From contig NC_091980.1 of the NCBI RefSeq assembly GCF_044704955.1, positions 92,008,001 through 92,072,000 of the forward strand: 64,000 nucleotides of DNA, written 5' to 3'. Each line of letters opens with the position of its first letter. The stretch's first letter is position 1. Shown here piece after piece: positions 8,141 through 48,976 of this stretch. This DNA comes from Pristiophorus japonicus. Lineage: Eukaryota. The position numbers and the translations under genes were made by a program. The notes below the pieces were generated by a model. It was not told the origin of the DNA. It did no database searches and worked only from the letters and a program-made list of their open reading frames with translations.

Positions 8141-8845
8141 GTGCAGAAATTGCGGTCGGAGGCTTCCCGCGGGCGGATGCCTACTACCTGAAAAAAAATC
8201 GACAAACTTACCTCGTGGTCCAGGAGGCTCGGCGACTTGTGGTCCTGGGCCTCTAAGCGTAGGCCTGCGTAGAGGCTTACGTGTCTCAGGGCCACAGGTG
8301 TTTCGAAAGCGTCCATGGGATCACGTGGACCAGCCCAACCAATCAAAGTAGGGGTATTCCTATTCATACTTGTGGTGAGTTCCGTATGTAAGGAATCACC
8401 ATAAGTATGATTGGGAATACCCGCAAAAATGTTTTAAAAAATTATATATTTAAAATTAATCAAAATGGAATTTAATTAATTATTTAATACAACAATTGTA
8501 ATTTTTGAAAAATAAATGTTCATATTTTAAAGGGTCTAAAAATTTTTACGTTTTTTTTTCATCATTTTTCTATTCTTTAAAAGTCTTACACTGATAAAAG
8601 CAGGTCTTACGCTTGCTTTTATTAGGCGTAAGAATGTCACGGGCATTTGTTGGGCAGAAGTTGGACAAATAGCCCAACTCTCCACCAGCGAATGTCCATT
8701 TACTTCAGATTCGTATGATCTGTCAAGAGGACTCTTGTCAGATCACTAGTTCCAGGTTTTGCCACATGTGCATGCCTAAACCCAAAACTTGCAGGGCCAC
8801 TATGGGCCCATGCACACCTTGTATGCACCCGTAGGGGCATGAAAT
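8141..8845. mobile_element. Harbinger-type MITE (degenerate ends)
   Basis: Similar along its length to 43915-44586 and, inverted, to 40408-41144. Confidence 0.65.
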
Positions 8846-9584
8846 CAAACCTTATACATTTTACATAAGAACATAAGAACATAAGAATTAGGAACAGGAG
8901 TAGGCCATCTAGCCCCTCGAGCCTGCTCCGCCATTCAACAAGATCATGGCTGATCTGGCCGTGGACACAGCTCCACTTACCCGCCTGCTCCCCGTAACCC
9001 TTAAATCCCTTATTGGTTAAAAATCTATCCGTGATTTGAATACATTCAATGAGCTAGCCTCAACTGCTTCCCTGGGTAGAGAATTCCACAGATTCACAAC
9101 CCTCTGGGAGAAGAAATTCCTTCTCAACTCGGTTTTAAATTGGCTCACCCGTATTTTGAGGCTGTGCCCCCGAGTTCTAGTCTCCCCGACCAGTGGAAAC
9201 AACCTCTCTGCCTCTATCTTGTCTATCCCTTTCATTATTTTAAATGTTTCTATAAGATCACCCCTCATCCTTCTGAACTCCAACGAGTAAAGACCCAATC
9301 TACTCAATCTATCATGATAAGATAACCCTCTCATCTCCGGAATCAGCCTAGTGAATCATCTCTGTACCCCCTCCAAAGCTAGTATATCCTTCCTGAAGTA
9401 AGGTGACCAAAACTGCACGCAGTACTCCAGGTGCGGCCTCAGCAATACCCTGTACAGTTGCAGCAGGACCTCCCTGCTTTTGTACTCCATCCCTCTCGCA
9501 ATGAAGGCCAACATTCCATTCGCCTTCCTGATTACCTGCTGCACCTGCAAACTAACTTTTTGGGATTCATACACAAGGAGCAGC

Positions 9585-9672
9585 GGCCGCGTGGCGTAAT
9601 GGATAAGGTGTCTGACTTCGATTATAACCACAATGTTATCAGAGATTACAAGTTCGCGTCATACCGCGGTCA
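9585..9672 (+). tRNA. tRNA-Arg(TCG) pseudogene with a 16-nt insertion at the canonical intron position
   Basis: GGCCGCGTGGCGTAATGGATAAGGTGTCTGACTTCG-A-[TTATAACCACAATGTT]-ATCAGAGATTACAAGTTCGCGTCATACCGCGGTCA matches the vertebrate Arg-TCG body. Anticodon at 9618-9620. The T-arm is mutated. Confidence 0.88.
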
Positions 9673-9701
9673 ACTAACTCACCGCGTGAAATTTTGTCAG
9701 T

Positions 9702-9773
9702 TCCTCGTTAGTATAGTGGTGAGTATCCCCGTCTGTCACGCGGGAAACCGGGGTTCAATTCCCCAATGGGGAG
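9702..9773 (+). tRNA. tRNA-Asp(GTC) pseudogene
   Basis: 72 nt, about 5 differences from the vertebrate tRNA-Asp consensus, three of them CpG-type transitions. Anticodon at 9735-9737. Confidence 0.95.
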
Positions 9774-12476
9774 GCAGTTGTTTCAAAATGAAGAATTTTC
9801 CCCAGATCGGGGGGGCACTGTTTAATGTTTTTTGTTTGCTCCCAAAAGAGTTCATGCACAAGGACCCCAGGTCCCTCTGCACCGCAGCATGTTGTAATTT
9901 CTCCCCATTCAAATAATATTCCCTTTTACTGTTTTATTTTCCAAGGTGGATGACCTCACATTTTCTGACATTGTATTCCATCTGCCAAACCTGAGCCCAT
10001 TCGCTTAACCTATCTAAATCTCTTTGCAGCCGCTCTGTGTCCTCTACACAACCTGCTTTCCCACTAATCTTTGTGTCATCTGCAAATTTTGTTGCACTAC
10101 ACTCTGTCCCCTCTTCCAGGTCATCTATGTATATTGTAAACAGCTGTGGTCCCAGCACTGATCCCTGTGGCACACCACTCACCACCAATTTCCAACATGA
10201 AAAGGACCCATTTATCCCGACTCTCTGCTTTCTGTTAGCCAGCCAATTCTCGATCCATGCTAATACATTTCCACTGACTCCGCGTACCTTTATCTTCTGC
10301 AGTAACCTTTTGTGTGGCACCTTATTGAATGCCTTTTGGAAATCTAAATACACCACATCCATTGGTACACCTCTATCCACCATGCTCGTTATATTCTCAA
10401 AGAATTCCAGTAAATTTGTTAAACATGATTTCCTCTTCATGAATTCATGTTGCGTCTGCTTGATTGCACTATTCCTATCTAGATGTCCCGCTATTTCTTC
10501 CTTAATGATAGCTTCAAGCATTTTCCCCACAACAGATGTTAAACTAACCGGCCTATAGTTACCTGCCTTTTGTCTGCCCCCTTTTTTAAACAGAGGCATT
10601 ACATTAGCTGCTTTCCAATCCGCTGGTGCCTCCCCAGAGTCCAGACAATTTTGGTAGATTATAACGAATGCATCTGCTATAACTTCCGCCATCTCTTTTA
10701 ATACCCTGGGATGCATTTCATCCAGACCAGGGGACTTGTCTACCTTGAGTCACATTAGCCTGTCCAGCACTATCCCCCTAGTGATAGTGATTATCTCAAG
10801 GTCCTCCCTTCCCACATTCCCGTGACCAGCAATTTTTGGCATGGTTTTTGTGTCTTCTACTGTGAAGACCGAAGCAAAATAATTGTTTAAGGTCTCAGCC
10901 ATTTCCACATTTCCCATTATTAAATCCCCCTTCTCATCTTCTAAGGGACCAACATTTACTTTAGTCACTCTTTTCCGTTTTATATATCGGTAAAAGCTTT
11001 TACTAACTGTTTTTATGTTTTGTGCAAGTTTACTTTCATAATCTATCTTTCCTTTCTTTATTGCTTTCTTAGTCATTCTTTGCTGTCGTTTAAAATTTTC
11101 CCAATCTTCTAGTTTCCCACTAACCTTGGCCACCTTATACACATTGGTTTTTAATTTGATACTCTCCTTTATTTCCTTGGTTATCCATGGCTGGTTATCC
11201 CTTCTCTTACCGCCCTTCTTTTTCACTGGAATATATTTTTGTTGAGCACTATGAAAGAGCTCCTTAAAAGTCCTCCACTGTTCCTCAATTGTGCCACCGT
11301 TTAGTCTGTGTTTCCAGTCTACTTTAGCCAACTCTGCCCTCATCCCACTGTAGTCCCCTTTGTTTAAGCATAGTACGCTCATTTGAGACACTATTTCCTC
11401 ACCCTCAATCTGTATTACAAATTCAACCATACTGTGATCACTCATTCCGAGAGGATCTTTTCCTAGGAGATCGTTTATTATTCCTGCCTCATTACACAGG
11501 ACCAGATCTAAGATAGCTTGCTCCCTTGTAGGTTCTGTAACATACTGTTCTAAGAAAGAATCCCGTATGCATTCTATGAATTCCTCCTCAAGGCTACCCT
11601 GTGCGATTTGATTGGACCAATCGATATGTAGGTTAAAATCCCCCATGATTACTGCCGTTCCTTTTTCACATTCCTCCATTATTCCCTTGATTTTTGCCCG
11701 CCCCACCGTGAAGTTATTATTTGGGGACCTATAAACTACACCCACCAGTGACTTTTTCCCCTTACTATCTCTAATCTCCACCCATAATGATTCAACATTT
11801 TGTTCATTAGAGCCAATATCGTCTCTCACAACTGCCCTGATATCTTCCTTTATTAACAGAGCTACCCCACCTCCTTTCCCTTCTTGTCTATCTTTCCGAA
11901 TTGTCAGATACCCCTGTATGTTTAATTCCCAGTCTTGGCCCCCCTGCAACCACGTTTCTGTAATGGCCACCAAATCATACCCATCTGTAATGATTTGTGC
12001 CGTCAACTCATTTACTTTATTTCGAATGCTGCGTGCGTTTAGGTAGAGTGTTTTAATACTGGTTTTTAAACCATGATTTTTAGTTTTGATCCCTCCTGCA
12101 GCCCCTTTATACTTATACATATTGTCCCTTCCTATCACCTTGTGGTTTACACTTACCCCAGTGCTACTCTGCTCTGTTGCCTCCTGCCTTTTGCATTCTT
12201 TCTTGGGGTCCTGTTCATCTGAGCTCTCACCCACTCTAACTAGCTCAGAGCCCTCTCCTGGGTTCCGAATACTCCTTGCATTGAGGCACCGAGCTTTCAT
12301 GCTTGCCTTTTTATTACACTTTGACCCTTTAGAATTTTGCTGTCAAGTGGCCCTTTTTGTTTTTTGCCTTGGGTTTCTCTGTCCTCCACGTTTACTCATC
12401 TCCTTTCTGTCTTTTGCTTTTGTCTCCATTTTGTTTCCCTCTGTCTCCCTGCAATGATTCCCATCCCTCTGCCATA

Positions 12477-13422
12477 TTAGTTTAACTCCTCCCCAACAGC
12501 ACTAGCAAACACTCCCCCGAGAACATTGGTTCCGGTCCTGCCCAGGTGCAGACCGTCCGGTTTGTACTGGTCCCACCTCCCCCAGAACCGGTTCCAATGC
12601 CCCATGAATTTGAATCCCTCCCTGCTGCACCACTGCTCAAGCCACGTATTCATCTGAGCTATCCTGCGATTCCTACTCTGACTAGCTCGTGGCACTGGTA
12701 GCAATCCCAAGATTACTACTTTTGAGGTCCTATGTTTTAATTTAGCTCCTAGCTCCTTAAATTCATCTCGTAGGACCTCATCCCTTTTTTTATCTATATC
12801 GTTGGTACCAATGTGCACCACGACAACTGGCTGTTCACCCTCCCTTTTCAGAATGTCCTGCACCCGCTCCGAGACATCCTTGACCCTTGCACCAGGGAGG
12901 CAACATACCATCCTGGAGTCTCGGTTGCGGCCGCAGAAATGCCTATCTATTCCACTTACCGTTGAATCCCCTATCACGATTGCTCTCCCACAATTTTTCC
13001 TGCCCTCCTGTGCAGCAGAGCCAGCCACGGTGCCATGAACTTGGCTGCTGCTGCCCTCCCCTTTTGAGTCATCCCCTCAACAGTACTCAAAGCAGTGTAT
13101 CTGTTTTGCAGGGGATGACCGCAGGGGACCCCTGCACTACCTTCCTTGCACTGCTCTTCCTGCTGGTCTTCCACTCCCTATCTGGCTGTGGACCCTTCAC
13201 CTGCGGTAAGACTAACTCGCTACACGTGCTACCCACGTCATTCTCAGCATCATGGATGCTCCAGAGTAAATCCACCCTCAGTTCCAATTCCGCAACGCGG
13301 ACCGTCAGGAGCTGGAGGCGGATACACTTCCCGCACACGTAGTCGTCAGGGACACCGGAAGTGTCCCTGAGTTCCCACATGGTACAGGAGGAGCATATCA
13401 CGTGACCAAGCTCTCCTGCCAT
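12477..13422 (-). pseudogene. CR1 ORF1: N-terminal zinc finger/leucine zipper plus SGNH esterase domain (one frameshift)
   Basis: CSSC...CGKC followed by a heptad repeat, then GDS, VHIGTND and DGLHL esterase blocks in ORFs 13087..13422 and 12477..13028. Confidence 0.9.
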
Positions 13423-13689
13423 GACTTAACCCTTAGATACACTTAAATTGGCAACAACAATGCTAATGTTTACTCACTGATATAGAAGAGAAAAAATAAA
13501 AACTACTCACCAATCACCAGCCAATCACTTACCCCCTTGGCTGTGACATCACCTTTCTGTTTCTTTCTACTTCTATTTTGCCTTCTCCCTGTAGCTGCAC
13601 AAGCTGGCTCTCCAACGGACTCACGCTGCTCTCGACTCAGCAACGCACCTCCCGACCTCACGGCCTTTTTCAGCCTCTCCAACGGTGTA

Positions 13690-14440
13690 AAGAATGAGGA
13701 GACACAAAATAAACTCAAAGGTATAATTTCAATACGGGGTGCAGAGACAGAGAGACCCGTGATGTACATACATAAACCTTTGAAAGTAGCAGGATAAATT
13801 AAGAAAGCTGTTAAAAAAGCATATGGAACGTTGGCTTTATAAATAGAGGCATAGAGAACAAAAACAAGGAAGTCATGCTAAAGCTTTACAAAACACTGGT
13901 TAGGCCTCAGCTAGAGTATTGTGTTCAATTCTGGCATCACACATTAGGAAGAATGACAAGGCCTTAGAGGAGGTGCAGAAGAGATTTACTAGAATGGTTA
14001 TCAGGGATGAGAGACTTCAGTTATGTGTAGAGACTGGAGAAGCTGGGGTTGTTCTCTTTAGACGAGAGAAAGTAAAGAAGAGATCTGATAGAGGTGGTCA
14101 TAATCCCAAATGGTTTTGATAGAGTAAATAAGGAGAAACTACTTTCAGTGGCAGAAGGGTCAGTAACCAGAGGACACAGAATTAAGGTGATTGGCAAAAG
14201 AGCCAGAGGGAACATGAGGAAACGAAAATTACACAGTAAGTTGTCGTGATCTTGAAAGCACTGCCTGAAAGGATGGTGGAAGCAGATTAAACAGTATCTT
14301 TCAGAAGAAAATTGGTAAATAATTTACAGGGCTAAGAGGAAAGAGCTGGAGAGTGGGACTAATTGGATAGCTCTACGAAAGAACCGGCACAGGCACGATG
14401 GGCCGAATGGCCACTTTCTGTGCTATATCATTCTACGATT
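13690..14440 (+). mobile_element. Old CR1 3' fragment
   Basis: Degenerate RP.LEYCVQFW and LEEVQKRFTRM motifs plus a CR1 3' UTR. Confidence 0.8.
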
Positions 14441-14629
14441 CTTTAAAAGGATGGCCTAGAAATTCAAATGCATCTGATAATTTTGTTTCTCCTTGAGTGA
14501 GTTAGATAGCTGAGGAGAAGGAAAAGCTCTATTGTCATGCAGTTTAATTGGAGGACCAAATTACCCCAAATAAGGGCAGTTGTTTCCAGGAAGTAACAGA
14601 TCACTGAAAGCTGCAAGAGTCCAAATAGC

Positions 14630-20888: not shown

Positions 20889-23800
20889 GGCTCTGTGCCT
20901 CAATGCAGAGTATTCGGCATAAGATGGACGAATTAACTGCGCAGATTGCAGTTAACGGGTATGATGTAATTGGCATCACTGATACATGGCTCCAGGCTGA
21001 CCAAGGCTGGGAACTCAACATCCAGGGATATTCCACATTTAGGAAGATTAGACAGAAAGGAAAAGGAGCTGGGGTGGCGTTGCTGGTTAAAGAGGAAATT
21101 AATGCAATAGTAAGGAAGAACATTAGCTTGGATGATGTGGAATCGGTATGGGGTGGAGCAACGGAATACCAAAGGGCAAAAAATGCTAGTGGGAGTTGTG
21201 TACAGACCACCAAACGGTAGTAGCGAGGTTAGGGACAGCATCAAATAAGAATTTAGGGATGAGTGCAATAAAGGTACAGCAGTTATCATGGGCGATTTTA
21301 ATCTACATATTGATTGCACTAACCTAACTGGTAGCAATGCTGTGGAGGAGGATTTCCTGGAGTGTATTAGGGATGGTTTTCTAGACCAATATGTCGAGGA
21401 ACCAACTAGAGGGTTGGACATTCTAGACTGGGTGATGTGTAATGAGAAAAGACTAATTAGCAATCTTGTTGTGCGAGGCCCCTTGGGGAAGAGTGACCAT
21501 AATATAGTAGAATTATTTATTAAGATGGAGAGTGACACAGTTAATTCAGAGATTAGGGTCCTGAACTTAAGGAAAGGTAACTTTGATGGTATGAGACGTG
21601 AATTGGCTACAATAGACTGGCGAGTGATATTTAAAGGGTTGACGGTGGATAAGCAATGGCAAACATTTAAAGATCACATGGATGAACTTCAACAATTGTA
21701 CATCCCTGTCTGGAGTAAAAATAAAATGGGAAATGTGGCTCAACAGTGGCTAACAAGGGAAATTAAGGATAGTCTTAAATCCAAAGATGAGACATATAAA
21801 TTGGCCAGAAAAAGAAACAAACCTGAGGACTGGGAGAATTTTGTGATACAGCAGAGGAGGACTAAGGGTTTAATTTGGAGGGGGAAAATAGGGTATGAGA
21901 GGAAGCTTGCTGGAAACATAAAAACTGACTGCAAAAGCTTCTATAAATATGTGAAGAGAAAAAGATCAGTGAAAACAAACATAGGTCCCTTGCAGTCAGA
22001 TTCAGGTGAATTTATAATGGGGAACAAAAAAATGGTGGACCAGTTAAACAAATACTTTGGTCCTGTCTTCACGAAGGAAGACACAAATAATCTTCCATAA
22101 ATACTAGGGAACCAAGGGTCTAGTGAGAAGGAGGAACTGAAGGAAATTCTTATTAGGCGGGAAATTGTGTTAGGGAAATTGATGGGATTGAAGGCTGATA
22201 AATCCCTGGGGCCTCATAGTCTGCATCCCAGAGTACTTAAGGCAGTAGCCCTAGAAATAGTGGGTGCAATGGGGATCATTTTCCAACAGTCCATCGACTT
22301 TGGATCGGTTCCTATCGACTGGAGGGTATATAATGTAACATCACTTTTTAAGAAAGGAGGGAGAGACAAAATGGGTAATTATAGACCGGTTAACCTGACA
22401 GCAGTAGTGGGGAAAATGTTGGAATCAATTATTAAAGATGAAATAGCAGCACATTTGGAAAGCAGTGACAGGATCGGTCCAAGTCAGCATGGATTTACAA
22501 AAGGGAAATCATGCTTGACAAATCATCTAGAATTTTTTGAGGATGTAACTGGTAGAGTGGAGAAGGGAGAACCAGTAGATGTGGTGTATTTGGATTTCAA
22601 AAGGCTTTTGACAAGGTCCCACACAAGAGATTGGTGTGCAAAATTAAGCACATGGTATTGGGGGTAATGTACTAATGTGGATAGAGAACTGGTTGGCAGA
22701 CAGGAAACAGAGAGTCGGGATAAATGGGTCCCTTTCAGAATGGCAGACAGTGACTAGTGGGGTACCGCAAGGCTCAGTGCTGGGACCCCAGCTATATACA
22801 ATACACATTAATGATTTGGATGAAGGAATTGAGTGTAATATCTCCAAGTTTCTAGATGACACTAAGCTGGGTGGCAGTGTGAGCTGTGAGGAGGAGGCTA
22901 AGAGGCTGCAGCGTGACTTGGACAGGTTAGGTGAGTGGGCAAATGCGTGGCAGATGCAGTATAATGCGGATAAATGTGAGGTTATCCACTTTGGTGGCAA
23001 AAACACGAAGGCAGAATATTATTTGAATGGCGAGGTAAGGAAAGGGGAGGTGCAGCGATACCTGGCTATCATGGGACATCAGTCATTGAAAGTTGGCATG
23101 CAGGTTCAGCAGTCGGTGAAGAAGCCAAATAGTATGCTGGCCTTCATAGCTAGGGGATTTGAGTATAGAAACATAGAAACATAGAAAATAGGTGCAGGAG
23201 TAGACCATTCGGCCCTTCGAGCCTGCACCGCCATTCAATAAGATCATGGCTGATCATTCCCTCAGTACCCCTTTCCTGCTTTCCCTACATACCCCTTGGT
23301 CCCCTTAGCCGTAAGGGCCATATCTAACTCACTCTTGAATATATCCAATGAAATGGCATCAACAATTCTCTGCGGCAGGGAATTCCACAGGTTAACAACT
23401 CTCTGAGTGAAGAAGATTCTCCTCATCTCAGTCCTAAATGGTCTACCCCTTATCCTAAGACTATGTCCCCTTGTTCTGGACTTCCCCAACATCAGGAACA
23501 TTCTTACCGCATCTAACCTGTCCAGTCCCATCAGAATCTTATACGTTTCTATGAGAATCTCCCTCTCATCCTTCTAAACTCCAGTGAATAAAGGCCCAGT
23601 TGATCCAGTCTCTCCTCATATGACAGTCCAGCCAGCCCTGGAATCAGTCTGGTGAACCTTCACTGCACTCCCTCAATAGCAAGAACGTCCTTCCTCAGAT
23701 TAGGAGACCAAAACTAAACACAATATTCCAGGTGAGGCCTCACCAAGGCCCTATACAATTGCAGCAAGACCTCCCTGCTCCTATACTCAAATCCCCTAGC

Positions 23801-26800
23801 TATGAAGGCCAACATATCATTTGCCTTCTTCATCGCCTGCTGTACCTGCATGCCAACTTTCAGTGACTGATGAACCATGACACCCAAGTCTCATTGCACC
23901 TCCCCTTTTCCTAATCTGCCACCATTCAGATAATATTCTGCCTTCATATTTTTTCCCCCAAAATGTATAACCTCACATTTATCCACATTATACTGCATCT
24001 GCCATGTATTTGCCCACTCACCTAACCTGTCCAAGTCACCCACCCTGCAGCCTATTAGCATCCTTCTCACAGCTCACACCGTCACCCAGTTTAGTGTCAT
24101 CTGCAAACTTGGAGATATTACACTCTATTCCTTCATCCAAATCATTGATGTATATTGTAAAGAGCTGGGGTCCCAGCCTTGAGCCCTGCAGCACTCCACT
24201 AGTCACTGCCTGCCATTCTGAAAAGGACCCGTTTATCCCGACTCTCTGCTTCCTGTCTGCCAACCAGTTGTCTATCCTCGTCAGTACATTACCCCCAATA
24301 CCATGCGCTTTGATTTTGTACACCAATCTCTTGTGCGAGACCTTGTCAAAAGCCTTTTGAAAGTCCAAATACACCACATCCACTGGTTCTCCCTTATCCA
24401 CTCTGCTAGTTACATCCTCAAAAAATTCCAGAAGATTCGTCAAGCATGGTTTCCCTTTCATAAATCCATGCTGACTTGGTCCGATTCTGTCACGGCTTTC
24501 CAAATGCGCTGCTATTTCATCTTTAATGATTGATTCCAACATTTTCCCCACTACTGATGTCAGGCTAACCAGTCTATAATTACCTGTTTTCTCTCTCCCT
24601 CCTTTTTTAAAAAGTGCTGTTACATTAGCTACCCTCAAGTCCATAGGATCTGATCCAGAGTCGATAGGCTGTTGCAAAATGATCACCAATGCATCCACTA
24701 TTTCTAGGGCCACTTTCTTAAATACTCTGGGATGCAGACGATCAGGCCCCAGGGATTTATCAGCCTTCAATCCCATCAATTTCCTTAACACAATTCCCCG
24801 CCTAATAAGGATACCTTCAGTTCCTCCTTCTCACTAGACCCACTGTCCCCTCGTACATTTGGAAGATTATTTGTGTCTTCCATTGTGAAGACAGAACCGA
24901 AGTATTTGTTCAATTGGTCTGCCACTTCTTTGTTCCCCATTATAAATTCACCTGAATCCGACTGCAAGGGACCTATGTTTGTCTTCACTAATCTTTTTCT
25001 CTTCACATATTTATCGAAGCTTTTGCAGTCAGTTTTTATGTTCCCTGCAAGCTTCCTCTCGTACTCTATTTTTCCCATCTTAATTAAACCCTGAGTCCTC
25101 TTCTGCTGAATTCTAGATTTCTCCCAGTCCTCAGGTTTGTTGCTTTTTCTAGTCAATTTATATGCCCCTTCCTTGGATTTAACACTATCCTTAATTTCCC
25201 TTGTTAGCCATGGTTGAGCCACCTTCCCCGTTTTATTTTTACTCCAGACAGGGATGTATAATTGCTGAAGTTCATCCATGTGATCTTTAAATGTTTGCCA
25301 TTGCTTATCCACCGTCAACCCTTTAAGTATCCTTTGCCAGTCTATTCTAGCCAATTCACACCTCATACCGTCGAAGTTACCTTTCCTTAAATTCAGGACC
25401 CTAGTTTCCGAATTAACTGTGTTACTCTCCATCTTAATAAAGAATTCTACCATATTATGGTCACTCTTCCCCAAGGGACCTCGCACAACAAGATTGCTAA
25501 TTAGTCCCTTCTCATTACACATCACCCAGTCTAGGATGGCCAGCTCTCTGGTTGGTTCCTCGACATATTGGTCTAGAAAACCATCCTTAATACATTCTAG
25601 GAAATGCTCCTCCACTGCATTGCTACCAGTTAGGTTAGCGCAATCAATATGTAGATTAAAGTCGCCCATGATAACTGCTGTACCTTTATTGCATACATCT
25701 CTTATTTCTTGTTTGATGCTATCCCCAACCTCGCTACTACTGTTTGGTGGTCTGTACACAACTCCCACTAACGTTTTCTGCCCTTTGGAATTCCACAGCT
25801 CCACCTAGACCGATTCCACAACATCCAGGCTAATCTCCCTCCTTACTATTGCATTAATTTCCTCTTTAACCAGCAACACCACCCCGCCTCCTTTTATTCG
25901 CTGCCTATCCTTCCTGAATGTTGAATACCCCTGGATGCTGAGTTCCCAGCTCTGGTCACCCTGGAGCCATGTCTCCGTGATGCCAATTGCATCATATCCA
26001 TTAACTGCTGTCTGCACAGTTAACTCATCCACCTTATTCCGAATACTCCTCGCATTGAGGCACAGAGCCTTCAGGCTTGTCTTTTTAACACACTTTGCCC
26101 CTTTATCATTTTTCTGTAATGTGGCCCTTTTTGTTTTTTGCTTTGGGTTTCTCTGCCCTCCACTTTTACTATTCTCCTTTCTATCTTTTGCTTCTGCCTC
26201 CATTTTATTTCCCTCTGTATCCCTGCATAGGTTCCCATCCCCCTGTCATGTTCGTTTAACTCCTCCCTACAGCACTCGCAAACACTCCCCATAGGACATT
26301 GGTTTCGGTCCTGCCCAGGTGAAGACCATCCGGTTTGTACTGGTCCCACCTCCCCCAGAACCGGTTCCAGTGTCCCAGGAATTTGAACCCCTCCCTCTTG
26401 CACCACTTCTCAAGCCACGTATTCATCTGAGCTATCCTGCGATTCCTATTCTGACTAGAATGTGGCACTGGTAGCAATCCTGAGAGGAGCAGGGAGGTCT
26501 TACTGCAGTTGTACAGGGCCTTAGTGAGGCCTCACCTGGAATATTGTGTTCAGTTTTGGTCTCCTAATCTGAGGAAGGACGTTCTTGCTATTGAAGGAGT
26601 GCAGCGAAAGTTCATCAGACTGATTCCCGGGATGGCAGGACTGACATATGAAGAGAGACTGGATCAACTGAGCCTGTATTCACTTGAGGATCTCATAGGA
26701 ACATGTAAAATTCTGACGGGACTGGACAGGTTAGATGCAGGAAGAATGTTCCCGATGTTGGGGAAGTCCAGAATCAGGGGACCTAGTCTAAGGATAAGGG

Positions 26801-32134: not shown

Positions 32135-33768
32135 AACATAAGAAATAGGAGCAAGTGTAGGCCATACAGCCTCTTGAGCCTGCTCTGCCATTCAATAAGA
32201 TCATGACTGATCCTCGACCTCAACCTCACTTTCCCGCCCAATCCCCATATCCCTTGATTCCCTTAAAGTCCAAAAATCTATCACTCCCAGCCTTGAGTAT
32301 ACTCAACGACTTAGCATCCACAGCCCTTTGGGGTAGAGAATTCTGAAGATTCACAACCCTCTGAGTGAAGAAATGTTTCCTCAGCTCAGTCCTAAATGGC
32401 CGACCCATTATCCTGAGACTATGCCCCTTCATTCTCCTGCCAGGGGAAACAGCATCTCAACAACTACCCTGTCAAGCTCTCTCAGAATCTTATGTTTCAA
32501 TGAGATCACCTCTAATTCTTCTGAACTCCAGAGAGTATAGGCTCATTGTATTCAATGACTCTTCATAGGACAATCCTCTCATTTCAGGAATCAATCTAGT
32601 GAGTCTTTGTTGCACCACCTACAAGGCAAGTATATCTGTCCTTAGGTACGGTGACTAAAATACACAGTACTCCAGGTGTGGTCTCACTAAAGCCCTGTAA
32701 AATTGCAGCAAGACTTCCTTACTCTTGTACTACAATCCCCTTACAATAAAGGCTAACTTGCCATTTGCCTTCTTAACTTCTTGCTGCACCTGCATGTTAA
32801 CTTCCTGTGTTTTGTATACAAGGGCACCCAAATCCTTCTAAATACTAACATTTAATAGTTTCTCATCATTTAAAACATATTGAGGGAGAAATTCGGTCAC
32901 GCCTCATTTAGCATGGTAACCCAGGCAGAGTGGTAATTTTAGCGTCTTGAAAAAGTTTGCGCCCTCCGCCCAGAAATTCGTCAGCGTCGGTCGAAGCGCT
33001 GACAGGGGCACTAAATCAGCCATTGCACACCAGAGCTGGGGGGACGCTAACGAAAATGCCAGTGCCAAATTTAACCGAGTCATTGTGCATGCGCCGAACT
33101 CCGATTCCGATCCCAGGAAAAGTCGAGTCTTAAAGGCGCAGCATAGTAATGCACCCATTAACGTTTTCAAAATCACTTTTTCTCAAGCTGACCTCTTATT
33201 TCTGTCTGCCGCTGCAAATTCGGAGGCTCACCACCTCTATGTAAACGTGTGTAAAAACGTTGCCCTGTCTGTGACCTCCGACGGAAGCGCATCCTCATCC
33301 CTTTAAGAAGCCACCAGTTAACGACTCTGCAAGCCTGTTCCGGCTGTTTTTCCAGACGTCGTTCTTAGCAACCACTAAAAGAGGTTGCTGGCACCTAATT
33401 TTCCGACCGGGGCACAAGCATGAGTGTTGCACCAAGAATATGTCATGATCGGAATGATCATCAGCAGCCAGGCGCTACTAGTTTGCATCCCCAGTGAACC
33501 TCTAATAAATTGTCGGTCGGGGTGCTAAATGCTGCACTCCCGGTCAATAACCACTTATGCTCCCATTAACTGGCCACTAACTGAGGTGTTAGACAACCGA
33601 AAATCCAGCCCATTCTGTTTTTCTATTCTTCCTACCGAAGTGAATAACCTCACATTTCCCCACATTATACTCAATCTGCCAACTTCTTGCCCATTCACTC
33701 AACCTGCCTATATCCCTTTGCAGACTCTTTGTATCTTCCTCATAGTTTACTTTACCACCTACCTTTGA
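32135..33768 (-). mobile_element. CR1 3' fragment interrupted by a MITE
   Basis: ORFs 32226..32432 and 33589..33798 are RT C-terminal sequence. Tail at 32135. Confidence 0.85.
32882..33611. mobile_element. Harbinger-type MITE
   Basis: 3-bp TSD ATT (32879-32881, 33612-33614). Imperfect TIRs GAGGGAGAAATTCGGT / ACCGAAAATCCAGCCC. Host CR1 rejoins seamlessly when it is removed. Confidence 0.8.
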
Positions 33769-33864
33769 ATCGTGCTGTACCTTATTTGTTTTCCCCAAAT
33801 AAATTCTGTTACTGACCAGTCGCAGTCTCCTCCTTGCTTAAAGATGAAGAAAACCAAAACATTT

Positions 33865-36760
33865 TTTTATTCGTTCTGGGATGAGGGCGTCACTGGCAAG
33901 GCCAACATTTATTGCCCATCCCTAATTGCTCTTGAGAAGCTGGTGGTGAGCCGCCTTCTTGAAGCACTGCAGTCCTTGTGGTGAAGGTACTCCCACAGCG
34001 CTATTAGGGAGGATTTTGACTCAGTGACAATAAAGTAATGGCGATATATTTCCAAGTCAGGATGGTCTTTAATTTGGAGAGGAACTTGCTGCTGATGGTG
34101 CTCCCATGCGCCTGCTGCCCTTGTCCTTCTAGGTGGTAGAGGTTGTGGCTTTGGGATGTGCTGCCGAAGAAGCCTTAGCGAGTTGCTGCAGAGCATCTTG
34201 TAGATGGTATACACTGGAGCCACGGTGCATCAGTTGTGGAGGGAGTGAATGTTTAAGGTGGTGCTTGGGGTGCCAATCAAGTGGGCTGCTTTGTGTCGGG
34301 CTGGGTAGTGTCGAGCTTCTTGAGTGTTGTTGGAGCTGCACTCATCCAGGCAATGGAGAGTATTCCGTCACACTCCTGACTTGTGCCTTGTAGATGGTGG
34401 AAAGGCTTTGGGGAGTCGGAAGGTGAGACACTTGCCGCAGAATACCCAGTCCAAGACCCAAGACAGTATTTATATGGCTGATCCAGTTAGGTTTCTGGTC
34501 AATGGTGACCCCCAGGATGTTGACGATGAGGATGGTGGGGGATTCGGCAATGATAATGCCATTGAATATCAAGGGGAGGTAGTTTGACCCTCGCTTGTTG
34601 GAGATGGTCATTGCCTGGCACTTGTGTGGCGCGAATGTTGCTTGCCACTTATCAGCCTAAGCCTGAATGTCATCCAGGTGTTGCTGCATGTATGGACTGC
34701 TTAATTATCTAAGGAGTCGCGAATAGCACTGAACACTGTGCAGTCATCAGCTAACGTCCCCACTTTTGACCTTATGATGGACGGAAGGTCATTGATGAAG
34801 CAACTGAAGATGGTTGGGCCTAGGACACTGCCCTGAGCAACTCCTGAAGCAATGTCCTGGTACTGTGATGATTGACCTCCAACAACCACAACCATCTTCC
34901 TTTGTGCTAGGTATGACTCCAGCCAGTGGAGAGTTTTCCCCCTAATTCACATTGACTTCAGTTTTACTAGGGCTCCTTGATGCTACACTCTGTCAAATGC
35001 TGCTTTGATGTCAAGGGCAGTCACTCTCACCTCACCTCTGGAATTCAGCTCTTTTGTCCATGTTTGAACCAAGGCTGTAACGAGGTCAGGAGCCAAGTAG
35101 TCCTGGCGGAACCCAAACTGAGCATCGGTGAGCAGGTTATTGGTGAGTAAATGCCACTTGATAGCACTGTCAACACCTTCCATCACTTTGCTGATGATTG
35201 AAAGTAGACTGATGGGGCGTTAATTGGCCAGACTGGATTTGTCCTGCTTTTTATGAACAGGATATACATGGGCAGTTTTCCACATTGTCTGGTAGATGCC
35301 AGTGTTGTAGTTGTATTGGAACAGTTTGACTAGAGGCTCGGCTAGTTCTGGAGCACAAGCCTTCAGCACGACAGCCGGGATATTGTCAGGGCCCATAGCC
35401 TTTGCTGTATCCAGAGTGCTCAGCCGCATTTTGATATCACGTGGAGTGAATCGAATTGGCTGAAGACTGTCTCCTGTGATGCTGGGGACCTCTAGAGGAG
35501 GCGGATTTAGATCTTCCACTCGGCATTTCTGGTTGAAGCTGCATTTAGGGTTGTTTTTTACACTCACATGCTGGGGTCCACCATCATTGATGATGGGGAT
35601 AGCCATAAAGCCTCCTACTCCCGTTAGTTGTTTAATTGTCCACCACCATTCACGAGTGGATGTGGCAGGACTGCAGAGTTTTAATCTGATCTGTTGAGTG
35701 TGGGATCACTTAGCTCTGTTTATAGCATGCTGCTTCTGCTGCTTAGCATGTATGTAATCCTGTGTTGCAGCTTCCCCAGATTGGTACCTCATTTTCAGGT
35801 ATGCAGGCACTGCTCATGGCATGCTCTTCTACATTCCTCATTGAACCAGTGTTGGTCCCCTGGCTTGATGGTAATGGTAGATTGAGAAATCTGCCGGACT
35901 ATGAGGTTACAGATTGTGATATAATACACGTCTGCTGCTGCTGATGGCCCACAGCCTCTCCTGGATGCCCAGTTTTCAGCTGTGAGATATGTTCTAAATC
36001 TATCCCATTTAGCACGGTGGTAGTGCCACACAACACGATGGAGGGTGTCATCACTGTTAAGACAGGACTTTGTCTCCACAAGGACTCTGCGGTGGTCACT
36101 CCAACCAATACTGTTACGGAGAGATGCATTTGCGACAAGTAGATTGGTGAGGTCAAGTAGGCTTTTCCCTTGCGGCAGCTGTAGGCCCAGCCTGGCAACT
36201 ATGATTTTCAGGCCAGCTTGGTAGGTAGTGGTGCTACTGAGCTGCTCTTGGTGATGGACATTGAAGTCCCCCACCCACGGTACATTGTATACCCTTGCTA
36301 CCCTCAGTGCTTCTTCCAAGTGGTTTTCAACATGGAGGAGTACTGATTCATCAGCTGAGGGAGGGTGTTAAGTGGTAATCAGCAAGATTAAAACCTGCCC
36401 ATGTTTTTGCTGATGCCGGAGTCAATGTTGAGAATTCCTGGTCAACACCCTCCCGAACGTATACCATTGTGCCATCACCTCTGTTGGGTCTGTCCTTCTG
36501 ATGGGACAGGATATACTCATGGATAGAGTTGGAGGAGTCTGGAATGTTGGCTGAAAGGTATGATTCTGTGAGTATGATTATGTCCGACCATTGCTTGACT
36601 AGTCTGTGGAACAGCTCTCCAGTCCCCAGATGTTGGTGAGGAGGACTTTGCAGGGTCAACTGGGCTGGGCGTACCATTGTCATGTCTGTAGCCAGTGCTG
36701 AGGTTGATGGCAGGTGGTCCGTCCAGTTTCAGTCTTCTTATTGTTTTCGTAGCTATTTGT
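33865..36760 (-). mobile_element. Divergent CR1/L2-group LINE, EN-RT only, degenerate
   Basis: EN motifs (DIIILTES, WVGDFNVHH), KAMGPDNIP, ALDIKAAFDRV, QGSVLGP, ADD in ORFs 36351..36683 through 34342..34611. Confidence 0.9.
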
Positions 36761-36764
36761 TACA

Positions 36765-38313
36765 ACTGAGTGGCTTGCTAGACCATTTCAGAGGGCAGTT
36801 AAGAGTCAACCACATTGCTGTGGGTCTGGAGTCAAATATAGGCCAGACCAGGTAAGGATGGCAGATTTCCTTCCCTAAAGCTCATTAGTGAACCACGTGG
36901 TTTTTTTACGACAATCCGATAGTTTCATGGTCACCATTACTGATACTAGCTTTTTATTCCAGATTTTTGAGGATGTAACGAGCAGGGTGGATAAAGGGCA
37001 ACCAGTGGATGTGGTGCATTTGGACTTCCAGATGGCATTTGACAGGGTGCCACATAAAAGGTTACTGCACAAGATAAAAGTTCACGGGGTTGGGGGTAAT
37101 AGAGGATTGGCTAACTAACAGAAAACAGAGAGTCGGGATAAGTAATTCATTCTCTGGTTGGCAACCAGTAACTAGTGGGATGCCGCAGGGATCAGTGCTG
37201 GGACCCCAACCTTTTACAATCTATATTAACAACTTGGAAGAAGGGACTGAGTGTAACGTTGCCACGTTTGCATACAAAGATGGGAGGAAAAAAATGTGTG
37301 AGGAGGACACAAAAAATCTGCAAAAGGACATAGATAGGCTAAGTGAGTGGGCAAAATTTTGGCAGATGGAGTATAATGTTGGAAAGTGTGAGATCATGCA
37401 CGTTGGCAGAAAAAAAATCAAAGAGTAAGTTCTTATTTAAATGGAGAAAGATTGCAAAGTGCTGCAGTACAGTGGGACCTGGGGATACTTGTGCATGAAA
37501 CACAAAAGGATAGTATGCGGATACAGCAAGTGATCAGGAAAGCCAATGGAATCTTGGCCTTTATTGCAAAGGGATGGAGTATCAAAACAGGAAAGTCTTG
37601 CTACAGCTATACAGGGTATTGGTGAGACCACACCTGGAATACTGCATGCAGTTTTGGTATCCATATTTACGAAAGGATATACTTTCTTTGGAGGCAGTTC
37701 AGAGAAGGTTCACTAGGTTGATTCCGAAGATGAGGGGATTGACATATGAGGAAAAGTTGACGAGATTGGTTCTCGACTCATTGGAATTCAGAAGAATGAG
37801 AGGTGATCTTATCGAAACGTATAAGATTATGAGGGGGCTTGACAAGGTGGATGCAGAGAGGATGTTTCCATTGATGGGAGAGACTAGAACTAGAGGGCAT
37901 GATCTTAGAATAATGGGTCGCTCATTTAAAACTGACATGAGGAGAAATTTCTTCTCTCAGAGGGTTGTAAATCTGTGGAATTCGCTGCCTCAGAGAACTG
38001 TGGAAACTGGGATATTGAATAAATTTAAGACAGAAATAGACAGTTTCTTAAACGATAAGGGGTTATAGGAAGCGGGCAGGGAAGTGGAGCTGAGTCCATG
38101 ATCAGATCAGCCATGATCTTATTGAATGGTGGAGCAGGCTCAAGGGGCCATATGGCCTACTCCTGCTCCTATTTCTTATGCTCTTATGTTCTTATTTATT
38201 TAATTAACTGAATTTAAATTCCCCAGCTGCCGTGGTTGGATTTGAACTCACATCTCTGGATCATTAGTCCAGGCCTCTGGATTACTAGTCCAGTAACATT
38301 TTCACTATGCTAC
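36765..38313 (-). mobile_element. tRNA-derived SINE-like head/body (38313-38195 and 36962-36765), split by a CR1 insertion
   Basis: Minus strand reads GGTAGCATAGTGA (A box-like) ... GAGTTCAAATCC (B box). The two halves rejoin as ttccagatttatttaattaactg. Confidence 0.75.
36963..38194 (+). mobile_element. 5'-truncated CR1 (TTCTTATG-tail family)
   Basis: RT ORFs 36888..37118, 37090..37428, 37574..38068 and a tail at about 38173-38194. Confidence 0.92.
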
Positions 38314-40407
38314 CATTCCCTATACAATTCTGAATTTTTTTTGGTCTCTTTTATGCATCCTTTATTGCTGTTTATATTATCGGCTTTGCCCCATAATATG
38401 TAATTTATGCATGCTTGTGTTTTTTTTTGTTTTGTTTCTAGCTTTAGAGGAACTATAAGTTAAAAGTAGTTGTATTTGTGACATCAAGTAAATAATATAA
38501 ATTGACAAGGTTACCTATGTTGTCCATTAACAAAACAATTGTGCGCTATATAGATTTGTCAGACGAATGAGTCTTTGGTGCTTCCAGGCCATCGGACTAT
38601 TACATTAAGCAGCTTTTCTTTGGCTTTGCACATCTGGCAGAATCAATTAAATGGTCGCTTTTATAATTAATGTACACGTGACTACTGGCACAGATGGTAA
38701 TTTTCATATTATACAGTGAACAGCACTGAGTATGTTATTTACATGAGTCACTTTATAAAATTCCTTCTTTATGTTTGGCCTTTATGGCAGAAAAATGAAT
38801 TAAATCAACTGACGTAACTTTTGAGCCATTAAACCAGAAATTGCATTAATGCAGTGATCCACTCATTTCTGATGGAGACACACTGTGTCACTAACCAAAT
38901 GATGCAGCGGCAAAGAAAACCTAAAGCTCTAGTGACCTGAATATCTGGGAATAATGCTTTGATTTTCCTTTTTAGTCAAGATGTGTCTTGTATAATATTA
39001 GTTTTTGCAATAAATTGATCAATATAACTATGAAATTCATTTATATGTATTCAATACATTATATTATATTACATATTATTTATTATATTATAGTCATTCA
39101 ATATAAATCAGAAATTCATTCCTGATTGGTGTTTCCTTTCTTCTGCAGAGACTTCTTTAAAAAAAAAACATTATCCAAAAAGGTGTCATCTGTCAAAAAA
39201 TATCTGAGCACAATATGCAAAATCAAAGGCAAAACATCTCCTTTGAATTTTTCATTTTTGAATGTGAATATGATCTTTCATCTTGCTTGCCCCACTTAAA
39301 GTCATCTGGTGCTTGTCCTCAAATGATTTTTTCTTTCAATAACAAAATGATCCTGTTGGATTAAAAAACGTAAGTTGAATTAATTTCTGCAAAACGTTGG
39401 TGTGATAGTTCAGTATAATGGAACAACAATATGCACAATTCAAAATGCAGTGACACCAACATTTATTTGTTTGTTTCATACAGTGAGAAAACATCCCTTT
39501 ACATATTGACTGGATTTTCTTCCCACTGGTAGGTTTGCATTGGGGCAATTCTAACATCCACCAATGTGAAACTGCCACTGCTTTGCTGCAATTTTCCCAC
39601 AAATTCATGGTGTGTTTGAGGACAATTCTGAAGAGCCTTTTAACAAAGCTTACCTGAAGTATGAGGGAACCACACTGGGATCATCAGTGATTGCAGCAGA
39701 GGGTAGCTCCAGTCTCCCAGGGACCATCTAGCAACTTGTCTTCCAGTAGAAAAGAGTGCTAGAGTGTTAGATTGCCTCAGGATAGAGAAACCATGGCAGC
39801 TCCCTGGGTATCACCCATTTGCATTCTAGATTGAATGTAGCTACACATTAATTTTCCTGTTCATGAAGTTAAATGGCATTTTGTAACGAGGCATGGGTGA
39901 CAACGTGCATGCAGTCAATGTACCCCTCTACCCTTGGAAATTCTGCAAAATATTAAAATTCAATAGCCTTTTCTTGCTGATACCTAATGTCCAATTTTTA
40001 ATTTGGTTGAAACCTTACTTTGAACATTATAAATTTCAGTTACTGAGGAAAAATTAACAGAAAGCATTTTATGAGAATTGTGGGAATCCAGCTTGCACAA
40101 CCCATGGCCAGATTCCAGAGTCATGAGTTTATATAGGTGTTTTCCACTATAAATATGAATATTGGGATTTATTACAGGAAATAATGGACACAAAAACTGA
40201 CCAAAACGGTGATATAGACAGGAAATGCACACAGACATAAGATTTTTAATATATTGTAGCTAGTTTTTTTTTAAATCATCACCTTATAAATGAAAAGATC
40301 AAAGCCTCTGTTCACAGTGTACCTAGCCGGTTAAAAACATGAGAAATAAGAAGTATAATCAATGTCAGCTTGTGCCAATGCACTTTGTGACATAAGACAG
40401 AGATATT

Positions 40408-48700: not shown

Positions 48701-48976
48701 TGAGTTTCTCTGCCCTCCACTTTTCCTCATCTCCTTTCTTTTGCTTTTGCCTCCTTTTTGTTTCTCTCTGTCTCCCTGCATTGGTTCCCATCCCCCTGCC
48801 ATATTAGTTTAACTCCTCCCCAACAGCACTAGCAAATACTCCCCCTAGGACATTGGTTCCGGTCCTGCCCAGGTGCAGACCATCCGGTTTGTACTGGTCC
48901 CACCTCCCCCAGAACCGGTTCCAATGCCCCAGGAATTTGAATCCCTCCCTGCTGCACCATTGCTCAAGCCACGTAT
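45762..48976 (-). mobile_element. Younger CR1, 5'-truncated within ORF1
   Basis: ORFs 48289..48720, 47310..48317, 46832..47143, 45861..46847. Esterase C-terminus at 48804-48976. (ATAGAAAC)n tail. Confidence 0.93.

What the first reader, a model, noticed from the sequence alone, without database searches (positions are those of the whole stretch)
9566..9864. Apparent retroposed, unprocessed dimeric pre-tRNA (Arg-TCG + Asp-GTC) inside a CR1 LINE
Seen: a 271-bp insert (9580-9850) interrupts CR1 ORF2 and is flanked by a 14-bp duplication, TTCATRCACAAGGA (9566-9579, 9851-9864). It starts with a 5-nt leader GCAGC, then tRNA-Arg(TCG), a 29-nt spacer, tRNA-Asp(GTC), and a trailer with a CCCC-AGATC-GGGG hairpin and a T6 run (9828-9833). 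Neither tRNA has an added CCA. Known: Pol III pre-tRNAs start at a purine a few nt upstream and end in U runs, and dimeric tRNA-Arg/tRNA-Asp precursors are established in budding yeast, whereas vertebrate tRNAs are regarded as monocistronic. Inference: this is a fossil of a dicistronic primary transcript, or a member of a dimeric tRNA SINE family. Caveat: T4 runs at 9692-9695 and 9796-9799 would have to be read through.
Basis: partly seen in the sequence, partly recalled or inferred. Interest (0 to 1): 0.85.

Follow-up and report, generated by a model that had tools for sequence, protein, structure and literature searches.

The report
Retroposed unprocessed Arg and Asp pre-tRNAs
An old 271-base retro-insertion inside a CR1-like LINE preserves two unprocessed tRNA precursors (Arg with an intron, then Asp), each ending in its own terminator; it looks more like two transcripts joined by a reverse transcriptase than a two-gene transcript, and this could not be settled without the genome.

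Summary
A 271-bp insert (9580-9850) with a 14-bp target-site duplication interrupts a minus-strand CR1-like LINE. Six paralogous LINE copies in the window carry the 14-mer once and have no insert.

The insert holds a decayed tRNA-Arg(TCG) with a 16-nt intron at position 37/38 (Rfam 19.3 bits; ARAGORN finds it only at a relaxed threshold) and a good tRNA-Asp(GTC) (48.6 bits). Neither carries CCA.

Each tRNA has the layout of a complete Pol III primary transcript: a 5-6-nt leader starting with G, the tRNA, and a 23-26-nt trailer ending in T4. A further 51 nt with a T6 run follow. They have no LINE-type tail and do not end at a T run.

I read this as one retroposition event that copied unprocessed pre-tRNAs (about 0.75). 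Template switching between separate transcripts is my favoured mechanism (about 0.4). It ranks ahead of a dicistronic read-through transcript (about 0.17), a dimeric SINE (about 0.2), and DNA-level or Pol II-derived copying (about 0.13).

Interest is moderate. The closest precedents are the Twin SINE, tailless retropseudogenes and CR1 template-switch chimeras.

The parts
9566..9579 (+). Target-site duplication, copy 1 (TTCATACACAAGGA; carries a later G>A change)
9580..9584 (+). 5' leader of module 1 (GCAGC, starts with a purine)
   Evidence: boundary from Rfam and ARAGORN
9585..9672 (+). Decayed tRNA-Arg(TCG): anticodon 9618-9620, T stem 2/5 pairs, acceptor stem intact
   Evidence: Rfam 19.3 bits; ARAGORN only at relaxed threshold; not a cloverleaf in the MFE fold
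9622..9637 (+). 16-nt intron-position insert (TTATAACCACAATGTT) between tRNA positions 37 and 38
   Evidence: ARAGORN -i; Rfam shows an 18-nt insert in the anticodon loop
9673..9695 (+). 3' trailer of module 1, ending in T4 (9692-9695)
9696..9701 (+). 5' leader of module 2 (GTCAGT, starts with a purine directly after the T4)
   Evidence: tRNA start
9702..9773 (+). tRNA-Asp(GTC), near-intact cloverleaf, one T-stem mismatch, no CCA
   Evidence: Rfam 48.6 bits; ARAGORN
9774..9799 (+). 3' trailer of module 2, ending in T4 (9796-9799)
9800..9850 (+). Unidentified 3' segment: weak hairpin, T6 at 9828-9833, then 17 nt. TCCCAAAA (9840-9847) is the reverse complement of the flank 9558-9565 that abuts TSD1
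9851..9864 (+). Target-site duplication, copy 2 (TTCATGCACAAGGA, ancestral form)
8866..13028 (-). Host CR1-like LINE: ORF1 esterase 12477-13028, EN 10750-12300, RT 9934-10716, ORF2 C-terminal remnants 9017-9579, (TTCTTATG)3 tail about 8866-8890

Best explanation
The insert is a one-off, old retro-insertion, about 7-13% diverged, made by a LINE endonuclease and reverse transcriptase through target-primed reverse transcription. That process gave the 14-bp target-site duplication.

The templates were nascent, unprocessed RNA polymerase III transcripts. Module 1 (9580-9695) is a complete pre-tRNA-Arg(TCG): a 5-nt leader starting with G, the tRNA with its 16-nt intron, and a 23-nt trailer ending in U4. 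Module 2 (9696-9799) is a complete pre-tRNA-Asp(GTC): a 6-nt leader starting with G, the tRNA, and a 26-nt trailer ending in U4.

I think the modules were separate transcripts. The reverse transcriptase would have started on a third, unidentified RNA piece (9800-9850). At its 5' end it jumped to the 3' U-tail of pre-tRNA-Asp, and at that RNA's 5' end it jumped to the 3' U-tail of pre-tRNA-Arg. The result is a chimeric retrocopy.

Shown: the insertion, the TSD, the empty sites, the two tRNAs, the intron position, the missing CCA and the T runs. Inferred: the RNA intermediate, the template switches and the identity of the reverse transcriptase.

My confidence is about 0.75 that this is a retro-insertion of unprocessed pre-tRNA sequence. 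It is about 0.4 that the two units were joined by template switching rather than being co-linear in the source.
For: A 14-bp TSD, with empty sites in the paralogous LINE copies.

Both tRNAs keep a leader and a trailer and lack CCA. The Arg unit keeps a 16-nt insert exactly at the canonical intron site 37/38. This is the position introns take in human tRNAs (PMC11747266).

Every T>=4 run sits where a Pol III transcript would end: 23 and 26 nt after each tRNA. The next unit starts at a G, 5-6 nt before its tRNA.

T4 and T5 are efficient terminators, with T4 read-through 'very poorly represented' in vitro (PMC3141230). True dicistronic Pol III genes have 4-17-nt spacers (PMC2566860).

There are no terminal inverted repeats (read from the ends) and no second copy of any part of the insert in 64 kb.

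Precedents exist. CR1 reverse transcriptase switching to tRNA-Asp has been proposed to give a TSD-flanked chimera (PMC5729268). LINE-1 chimeras with tRNA and other small RNAs carry 9-19-bp TSDs (bioRxiv 10.1101/2025.02.02.635956). Tailless tRNA retropseudogenes with TSDs are known (PMC5322556).

Divergence of the parts is mutually consistent. The Arg unit has 9 substitutions among the 68 comparable positions of 73 (5 are n), plus one 1-nt deletion, against the human UCG2 isodecoder printed in bioRxiv 10.1101/2021.02.06.430044. The Asp unit has 5 changes in 72 against the vertebrate consensus as I remember it. The TSD has 1 change in 14.
Against: No source loci could be inspected, so co-linearity in the genome is not excluded.

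Two template switches in one event are rare.

The 51-nt 3' segment matches no LINE or SINE tail in the window. It has neither an A tail nor the CR1 octamer tail, so what primed reverse transcription is unexplained.

The insertion site (GGGA|TTCAT) is not an L1-type TT|AAAA site.

Terminators 23-26 nt downstream of tRNA genes are also what plain genomic DNA of two adjacent genes would show.

The Arg unit has two damaging transversions (D stem, T-loop position 58) and a broken T stem. It may already have been a pseudogene or a SINE-like gene when copied.
Confidence: 0.4

Rival explanations
1. Dicistronic or read-through Pol III precursor. A tandem Arg-Asp locus with a 29-bp spacer was transcribed from the Arg promoter through both genes, and that single RNA was retroposed.
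For: The 5' end lies 5 nt before the Arg tRNA at a purine, as for a Pol III start. One TSD pair flanks the whole insert. Pol III terminators leak in vivo (PMC3141230). Tandem tRNA dicistrons exist in yeasts (PMC2566860). Another note of this scan reports tRNA arrays in this genome (s1-874544, unchecked).
Against: It needs read-through of T4 (9692-9695) and T4 (9796-9799), and of T6 as well if the RNA reached 9850. The insert does not end at a T run. The spacer is longer than in known dicistrons and contains a terminator. The 6-nt gap starting with G between that terminator and tRNA-Asp would be a coincidence. The B box of the Arg unit is degenerate in the present copy (AGTTCGCGTCA).
Confidence: 0.17
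2. A copy of a dimeric tRNA-derived SINE family. Such a family might itself have been born from a dimer, as proposed for the mosquito Twin SINE, and been amplified by a partner LINE.
For: It is short, TSD-flanked, headed by a tRNA-like unit with a good A box, and has two tRNA-related units, like the Twin SINE (Feschotte et al. 2001, listed as ref 96 in PMC3531059). By sheer numbers, SINEs are the commonest tRNA-bearing inserts in vertebrate genomes. The k-mer index found a few of the insert's words in runs of one organism (share 0.14-0.18), which neither supports nor excludes a family.
Against: Three internal T>=4 runs would stop Pol III inside the element. There is no LINE-derived or simple-repeat tail, although SINEBase definitions include a tail and at least 100 copies. 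The tRNA-Asp differs from the vertebrate sequence, as I remember it, only by five transitions, so it was essentially a real tRNA when inserted. There is no second copy, and no other tRNA-like sequence at all, in a repeat-rich 64-kb window.
Confidence: 0.2
3. A copy of a co-linear genomic tRNA-cluster segment not made from a Pol III transcript. Either a DNA fragment was captured at a staggered break, or a piece of a Pol II read-through or intronic RNA spanning two adjacent tRNA genes was retroposed.
For: Internal T runs are no obstacle to either route. The 3' end is not at a terminator. An inverted 8-nt copy of the flank at the 3' junction (shuffle p about 0.01 for that one comparison, about 0.07 after eight comparisons) hints at irregular repair at that end.
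Against: The 5' end falls 5 nt before the first tRNA, with roughly 0.13 chance under random breakpoints. A 14-bp TSD is typical of LINE-type integration, not of fragment capture. tRNAs inside Pol II transcripts are normally cut out quickly. This route still needs a source locus with only 29 bp between the genes.
Confidence: 0.13

Closest known systems
Chimeric retrocopies made by LINE reverse-transcriptase template switching (U6/L1 and tRNA/L1 chimeras in mammals; the proposed CR1-mediated tRNA-Asp/TguSINE1 chimera that founded PittSINE in birds)
   Same: One TSD pair encloses parts from different RNAs. The 5' partners are Pol III transcripts joined at their 3' U-run. tRNA-Asp and a CR1-rich genome are involved, as in PittSINE (PMC5729268; 10.1101/2025.02.02.635956).
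   Different: Here both recognisable partners are full-length unprocessed pre-tRNAs. The 3'-most partner is not a recognisable LINE, SINE or mRNA end and has no tail. Mammalian tRNA/L1 chimeras mostly hold antisense tRNA halves. No family arose from this event, as far as could be seen.
Tailless retropseudogenes of tRNAs and other small RNAs (Schmitz and colleagues; therian mammals)
   Same: tRNA-derived, flanked by TSDs, no oligo(A) tail. That screen allowed for precursor sequence before tRNAs (PMC5322556).
   Different: Those are single RNAs, 3'-truncated at internal single-stranded sites, and ascribed to L1. This insert is a pair of complete precursors with trailers, in a genome and window dominated by CR1-like LINEs.
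Twin SINE of Culex pipiens (Feschotte et al. [quoted passage not shown]
   Same: Two tRNA-related units in tandem, separated by a short spacer and mobilised by retroposition. An Arg-type tRNA is involved.
   Different: Twin is a multi-copy family of two Arg-related units. Here I saw a single copy, Arg plus Asp, with terminators inside. The details of Twin are from my memory and the title only.
Dicistronic Pol III tRNA-tRNA genes of yeasts (S. cerevisiae Arg-Asp, S. pombe Ser-Met, Y. lipolytica Lys-Glu-5S)
   Same: The same order of amino-acid identities as the budding-yeast pair, with two tRNAs close together on one strand.
   Different: Yeast spacers are 4-17 nt and free of terminators (PMC2566860). 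Here the spacer is 29 nt and includes a T4. No transcript or source locus is known.

Membership tests
LINE-mediated (target-primed) retrocopy | [quoted passage not shown] | tested here: met
   14-bp TSD. Six paralogous LINE copies carry the site once and lack the insert.
LINE-mediated (target-primed) retrocopy | 3' end carries what the partner LINE recognises: an oligo(A) tail, or a LINE 3' UTR with a microsatellite tail | tested here: not met
   The insert ends ...GTTTGCTCCCAAAAGAG. It has no A tail, no CR1 octamer repeats, and no match to any LINE end in the window.
Unprocessed Pol III pre-tRNA as template | 5' leader, 3' trailer ending in a U run, retained intron, no CCA | tested here: met
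   Leaders of 5 and 6 nt start with G. Trailers of 23 and 26 nt end in T4. A 16-nt insert lies at 37/38 in the Arg unit. No CCA on either tRNA.
Dicistronic Pol III tRNA-tRNA gene | Short spacer without a terminator between the two tRNAs | tested here: not met
   The spacer is 29 nt with T4 at 9692-9695. Known cases have 4-17 nt.
Dicistronic Pol III tRNA-tRNA gene | A genomic locus with both genes, and a transcript spanning the spacer | not testable with these tools
SINE (SINEBase definition) | At least about 100 dispersed copies per genome | not testable with these tools
   No other copy in the 64-kb window. The k-mer index gave shares of at most 0.18. Neither result settles it.
SINE (SINEBase definition) | Tail of simple repeats, or a body or tail shared with a partner LINE | tested here: not met
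SINE (SINEBase definition) | Head with an internal Pol III promoter and a body transcribable to its end | tested here: inconclusive
   The A box TGGCGTAATGG fits. The B box of the Arg unit is degenerate. Three internal T>=4 runs argue against full-length transcription.
Template-switch chimeric retrocopy | One TSD pair around parts that join at the ends of RNAs (3' U run of one next to the 5' end of the next) | tested here: met
   T4|G junction at 9695/9696, and a T4|C junction at 9799/9800.
Template-switch chimeric retrocopy | The parts derive from separate source loci | not testable with these tools
   Needs a genome search.
DNA transposon / MITE | Terminal inverted repeats and a family-typical TSD of 2-11 bp | tested here: not met
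   The ends GCAGCGGCC... and ...CCAAAAGAG are not inverted repeats, and the TSD is 14 bp.

The most novel reading that the evidence does not exclude
The insert is a fossil of a genuine vertebrate dicistronic Pol III transcript, tRNA-Arg then tRNA-Asp in the same order as in budding yeast, or the founder-type copy of a dimeric tRNA SINE. [quoted passage not shown]
Probability: 0.2. Interest if true: 0.65.

Novelty: new variant of a known kind. Interest (0 to 1): 0.4.

Why it matters
Retrocopies that freeze a Pol III primary transcript, with leader, intron, trailer and terminator, are rare records of where transcription started and stopped in an ancient germ line. If the two halves map to separate loci, this is a clean example of a non-L1 (probably CR1-type) reverse transcriptase jumping end-to-end between nascent pre-tRNAs. 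That is the step proposed for the birth of new SINE heads. If they map to one locus, vertebrate tRNA genes can be co-transcribed, which is regarded as exceptional. Either way the Arg unit suggests an intron-bearing tRNA-Arg(TCG) gene in this lineage, which is cheap to check. The locus itself is an old, decayed, single insertion in a dead LINE and probably has no function.

Tried and rejected
One local self-comparison of the window inside run_python used the host region 8700-14500 as query on the closed machine only.
- Runs: the look-up of sequencing runs found no run with more than 0.18 of the insert's words and no RNA holder. This is uninformative on copy number.
- Metagenome scans: two exact-pattern scans, one on the Arg T arm and acceptor and one on the tail, gave 0 hits. 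This was expected for an animal genome.
- Earlier findings: searching by sequence gave nothing.
- Papers: full-text search for strings from the Arg unit gave 0 papers.
- Protein-database trick: I considered searching spurious ORFs across other copies and did not run it.
- Hairpin: the CCCC-AGATC-GGGG hairpin and the whole tail fold no better than shuffles. I rejected the hairpin as a feature.
- DNA transposon or MITE: rejected, because there are no terminal inverted repeats and the TSD is 14 bp.
- 'Arg unit was already far from any real tRNA': I softened this after finding that the human UCG2 isodecoder is much closer (9 substitutions) than UCG1 (15).
- Neighbouring 'LINE with a tRNA-derived head' (33865-38313): I tested it as possible local evidence of template switching to tRNAs. 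Rfam found no tRNA-like match there at E<=1.
Full report
**What is there**

TTCATACACAAGGA (9566-9579) and TTCATGCACAAGGA (9851-9864) flank a 271-bp insert at 9580-9850.

The surrounding DNA is a LINE on the minus strand, about 8866-13028. It has an ORF1 with a GDSL-esterase domain, an APE-type endonuclease and an RVT_1 reverse transcriptase. Its 3' end carries three TTCTTATG octamers. This is the CR1 pattern of a conserved 3' UTR plus an octamer microsatellite (PMC4316615).

The window holds several more copies of this LINE. Four same-strand copies align straight across the site, with one copy of the 14-mer region and no insert (A1). The most similar copy (36966-38198, minus strand, 78% identical) reads TTCATGCACAAGTA once (A2). 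The insertion and its duplication are therefore real and not a chance repeat. The duplication was originally perfect.

**The two tRNAs**

tRNA-Asp(GTC) at 9702-9773 is called by ARAGORN and scores 48.6 bits against Rfam tRNA, with one T-stem mismatch. Against the vertebrate tRNA-Asp(GTC) sequence as I remember it, the copy differs by five transitions, three of them at CpG.

The Arg unit at 9585-9672 is much weaker. Rfam gives 19.3 bits, below the threshold of 29, with an 18-nt insertion in the anticodon loop and a mispaired T stem. Its minimum-energy fold is not a cloverleaf. ARAGORN with introns allowed finds nothing at default. At 90% threshold it reports tRNA-Arg(tcg) with a 16-nt intron, TTATAACCACAATGTT (9622-9637), exactly between positions 37 and 38, and only 2 of 5 T-stem pairs.

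I compared the exons by hand with the human Arg-UCG isodecoders printed in bioRxiv 10.1101/2021.02.06.430044. They differ from UCG2 by 9 substitutions (six of them transitions) and a 1-nt deletion, and from UCG1 by 15. Decay of the Arg unit (9 changes among 68 comparable positions), of the Asp unit (5 in 72) and of the TSD (1 in 14) is thus compatible with one age. The reference tRNAs of this species are unknown.

[quoted passage not shown] An intron in Arg-TCG would therefore be unusual. A 16-nt insertion landing by chance exactly at 37/38 is unlikely. I take it as an intron retained from the source gene; this is an inference.

**Anatomy of the insert**

Neither tRNA is followed by CCA. The only T>=4 runs are T4 at 9692-9695, T4 at 9796-9799 and T6 at 9828-9833. 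Read from the left, the insert has this layout:

| Coordinates | Content |
|---|---|
| 9580-9584 | leader GCAGC |
| 9585-9672 | tRNA-Arg with intron |
| 9673-9695 | 23-nt trailer ending TTTT |
| 9696-9701 | leader GTCAGT |
| 9702-9773 | tRNA-Asp |
| 9774-9799 | 26-nt trailer ending TTTT |
| 9800-9850 | 51 further nt containing the T6, ending 17 nt later in GTTTGCTCCCAAAAGAG |

The tail has no significant structure (z +0.5 to +0.8). It has no A tail and no CR1 octamers. Nothing in the window matches the tail or any other part of the insert beyond 8-15-nt chance hits.

The Arg unit is CpG-rich (observed/expected 1.59), the Asp unit is at 0.91 and the tail is at 0.31. The LINE flanks are at 0.42.

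**Copy number and source loci: not testable here**

- The k-mer index found no run with more than 0.18 of the insert's words and no RNA run.
From then on I sent none of those letters to any search tool.
- Two metagenome scans, a search of earlier findings by sequence, and a full-text search for sequence strings all returned nothing.
- Rfam at permissive thresholds finds no other tRNA-like sequence anywhere in the window.
- With one copy in 64 kb, only a family of more than roughly 10^5 copies would be unlikely (my estimate for a genome of a few Gb).

**Mechanism**

A 14-bp TSD, the absence of terminal inverted repeats, and content consisting of small-RNA sequence all point to target-primed reverse transcription by a LINE enzyme. 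This is the same route as for tailless tRNA retropseudogenes (PMC5322556) and small-RNA/LINE chimeras (10.1101/2025.02.02.635956). The retained leaders, intron and trailers and the missing CCA say the template was nascent nuclear pre-tRNA.

The open question is whether one RNA or several were copied.

Against a single Pol III transcript:
- It would have to read through two T4 runs, and the T6 as well if it reached 9850.
- T4 and T5 terminate efficiently in vitro, although leakiness occurs in vivo (PMC3141230).
- Known dicistronic Pol III genes have 4-17-nt spacers (PMC2566860).
- The insert does not end at a T run.

The same internal terminators, the missing tail and the near-canonical tRNA-Asp also argue against a SINE master copy, given the SINEBase definitions (PMC3531059).

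In favour of end-to-end template switching between separate transcripts: every T run lies at a junction, and each following unit starts like a Pol III transcript. CR1 reverse transcriptase switching onto tRNA-Asp, giving a TSD-flanked chimera, has been proposed for the origin of PittSINE (PMC5729268).

Weak points of my reading are the need for two switches, the unidentified 3' segment, and the fact that plain genomic DNA of two very closely spaced genes would look the same.

My odds:

| Reading | Probability |
|---|---|
| Chimera by template switching | about 0.4 |
| Dimeric SINE copy | about 0.2 |
| Read-through or dicistronic Pol III transcript | about 0.17 |
| DNA-level or Pol II-derived copy of a co-linear locus | about 0.13 |
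| Something else | remainder |

**A detail at the 3' junction**

TCCCAAAA (9840-9847), 3 nt before TSD2, is the exact reverse complement of TTTTGGGA (9558-9565), the bases that abut TSD1. In shuffles this gives p about 0.01 for that comparison. After allowing for the eight comparisons I made, it is about 0.07. It may be chance. It may instead be a trace of irregular priming or repair at the first-strand nick.

**Comparison with known things, and verdict**

The closest known kinds are:
- template-switch chimeric retrocopies;
- tailless tRNA retropseudogenes;
- the mosquito Twin SINE, proposed to derive from a dimeric tRNA precursor (Feschotte et al. 2001, cited);
- the yeast dicistronic tRNA genes.

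This locus differs from each, as set out in the membership table. I rate it a new variant of a known kind. It is well documented as an observation, unresolved in mechanism, and probably without function. Interest is moderate (0.4). It would rise to about 0.65 if a co-linear, co-transcribed Arg-Asp locus or a dimeric family were found. A plain genome BLAST of the two halves would decide it.

Noticed in passing
window 9840-9847 versus 9558-9565: The 8 bases TCCCAAAA near the 3' end of the insert are the exact reverse complement of the 8 bases that abut TSD1 on the other side. Shuffle p is about 0.01 for this comparison and about 0.07 after multiple comparisons. This is possibly a footprint of irregular priming or repair, and possibly chance.
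   Followed up: partly
window 33000-39000: The stretch another note calls a 'LINE with a tRNA-derived Pol III-type head' (33865-38313) gave no tRNA or other Rfam match at E<=1. Its part 36966-38198 (minus strand) is the closest paralogue (73-78% identical) of the CR1-like LINE that hosts the insert.
   Followed up: partly
window 12263-12707 versus 26037-26480 and 48599-48976: The ORF1-proximal part of the host LINE is 89-90% identical to two other copies. Its ORF2 and 3' parts are only 66-74% identical to the same copies. This suggests mosaic or recombinant CR1-like subfamilies, or a much more conserved 5' region.
   Followed up: no
window 21152-22143 and 24814-25805 (also 22146-22609 / 24349-24812): Long inverted arms, 89-90% complementary. 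These are two copies of the same LINE family head to head within 5 kb.
   Followed up: no
window 9431-9916 (+): A 161-codon open frame runs through the whole insert and both flanks. It crosses antisense LINE sequence and two tRNAs, so it is a chance ORF that gene callers might report.
   Followed up: no
window 9585-9773: The changes in the two tRNAs relative to the reference tRNAs comprise eight G>A, three C>T and three transversions on the sense strand. This G>A excess is not significant, but it is of the kind cytidine deamination of a cDNA would give.
   Followed up: no
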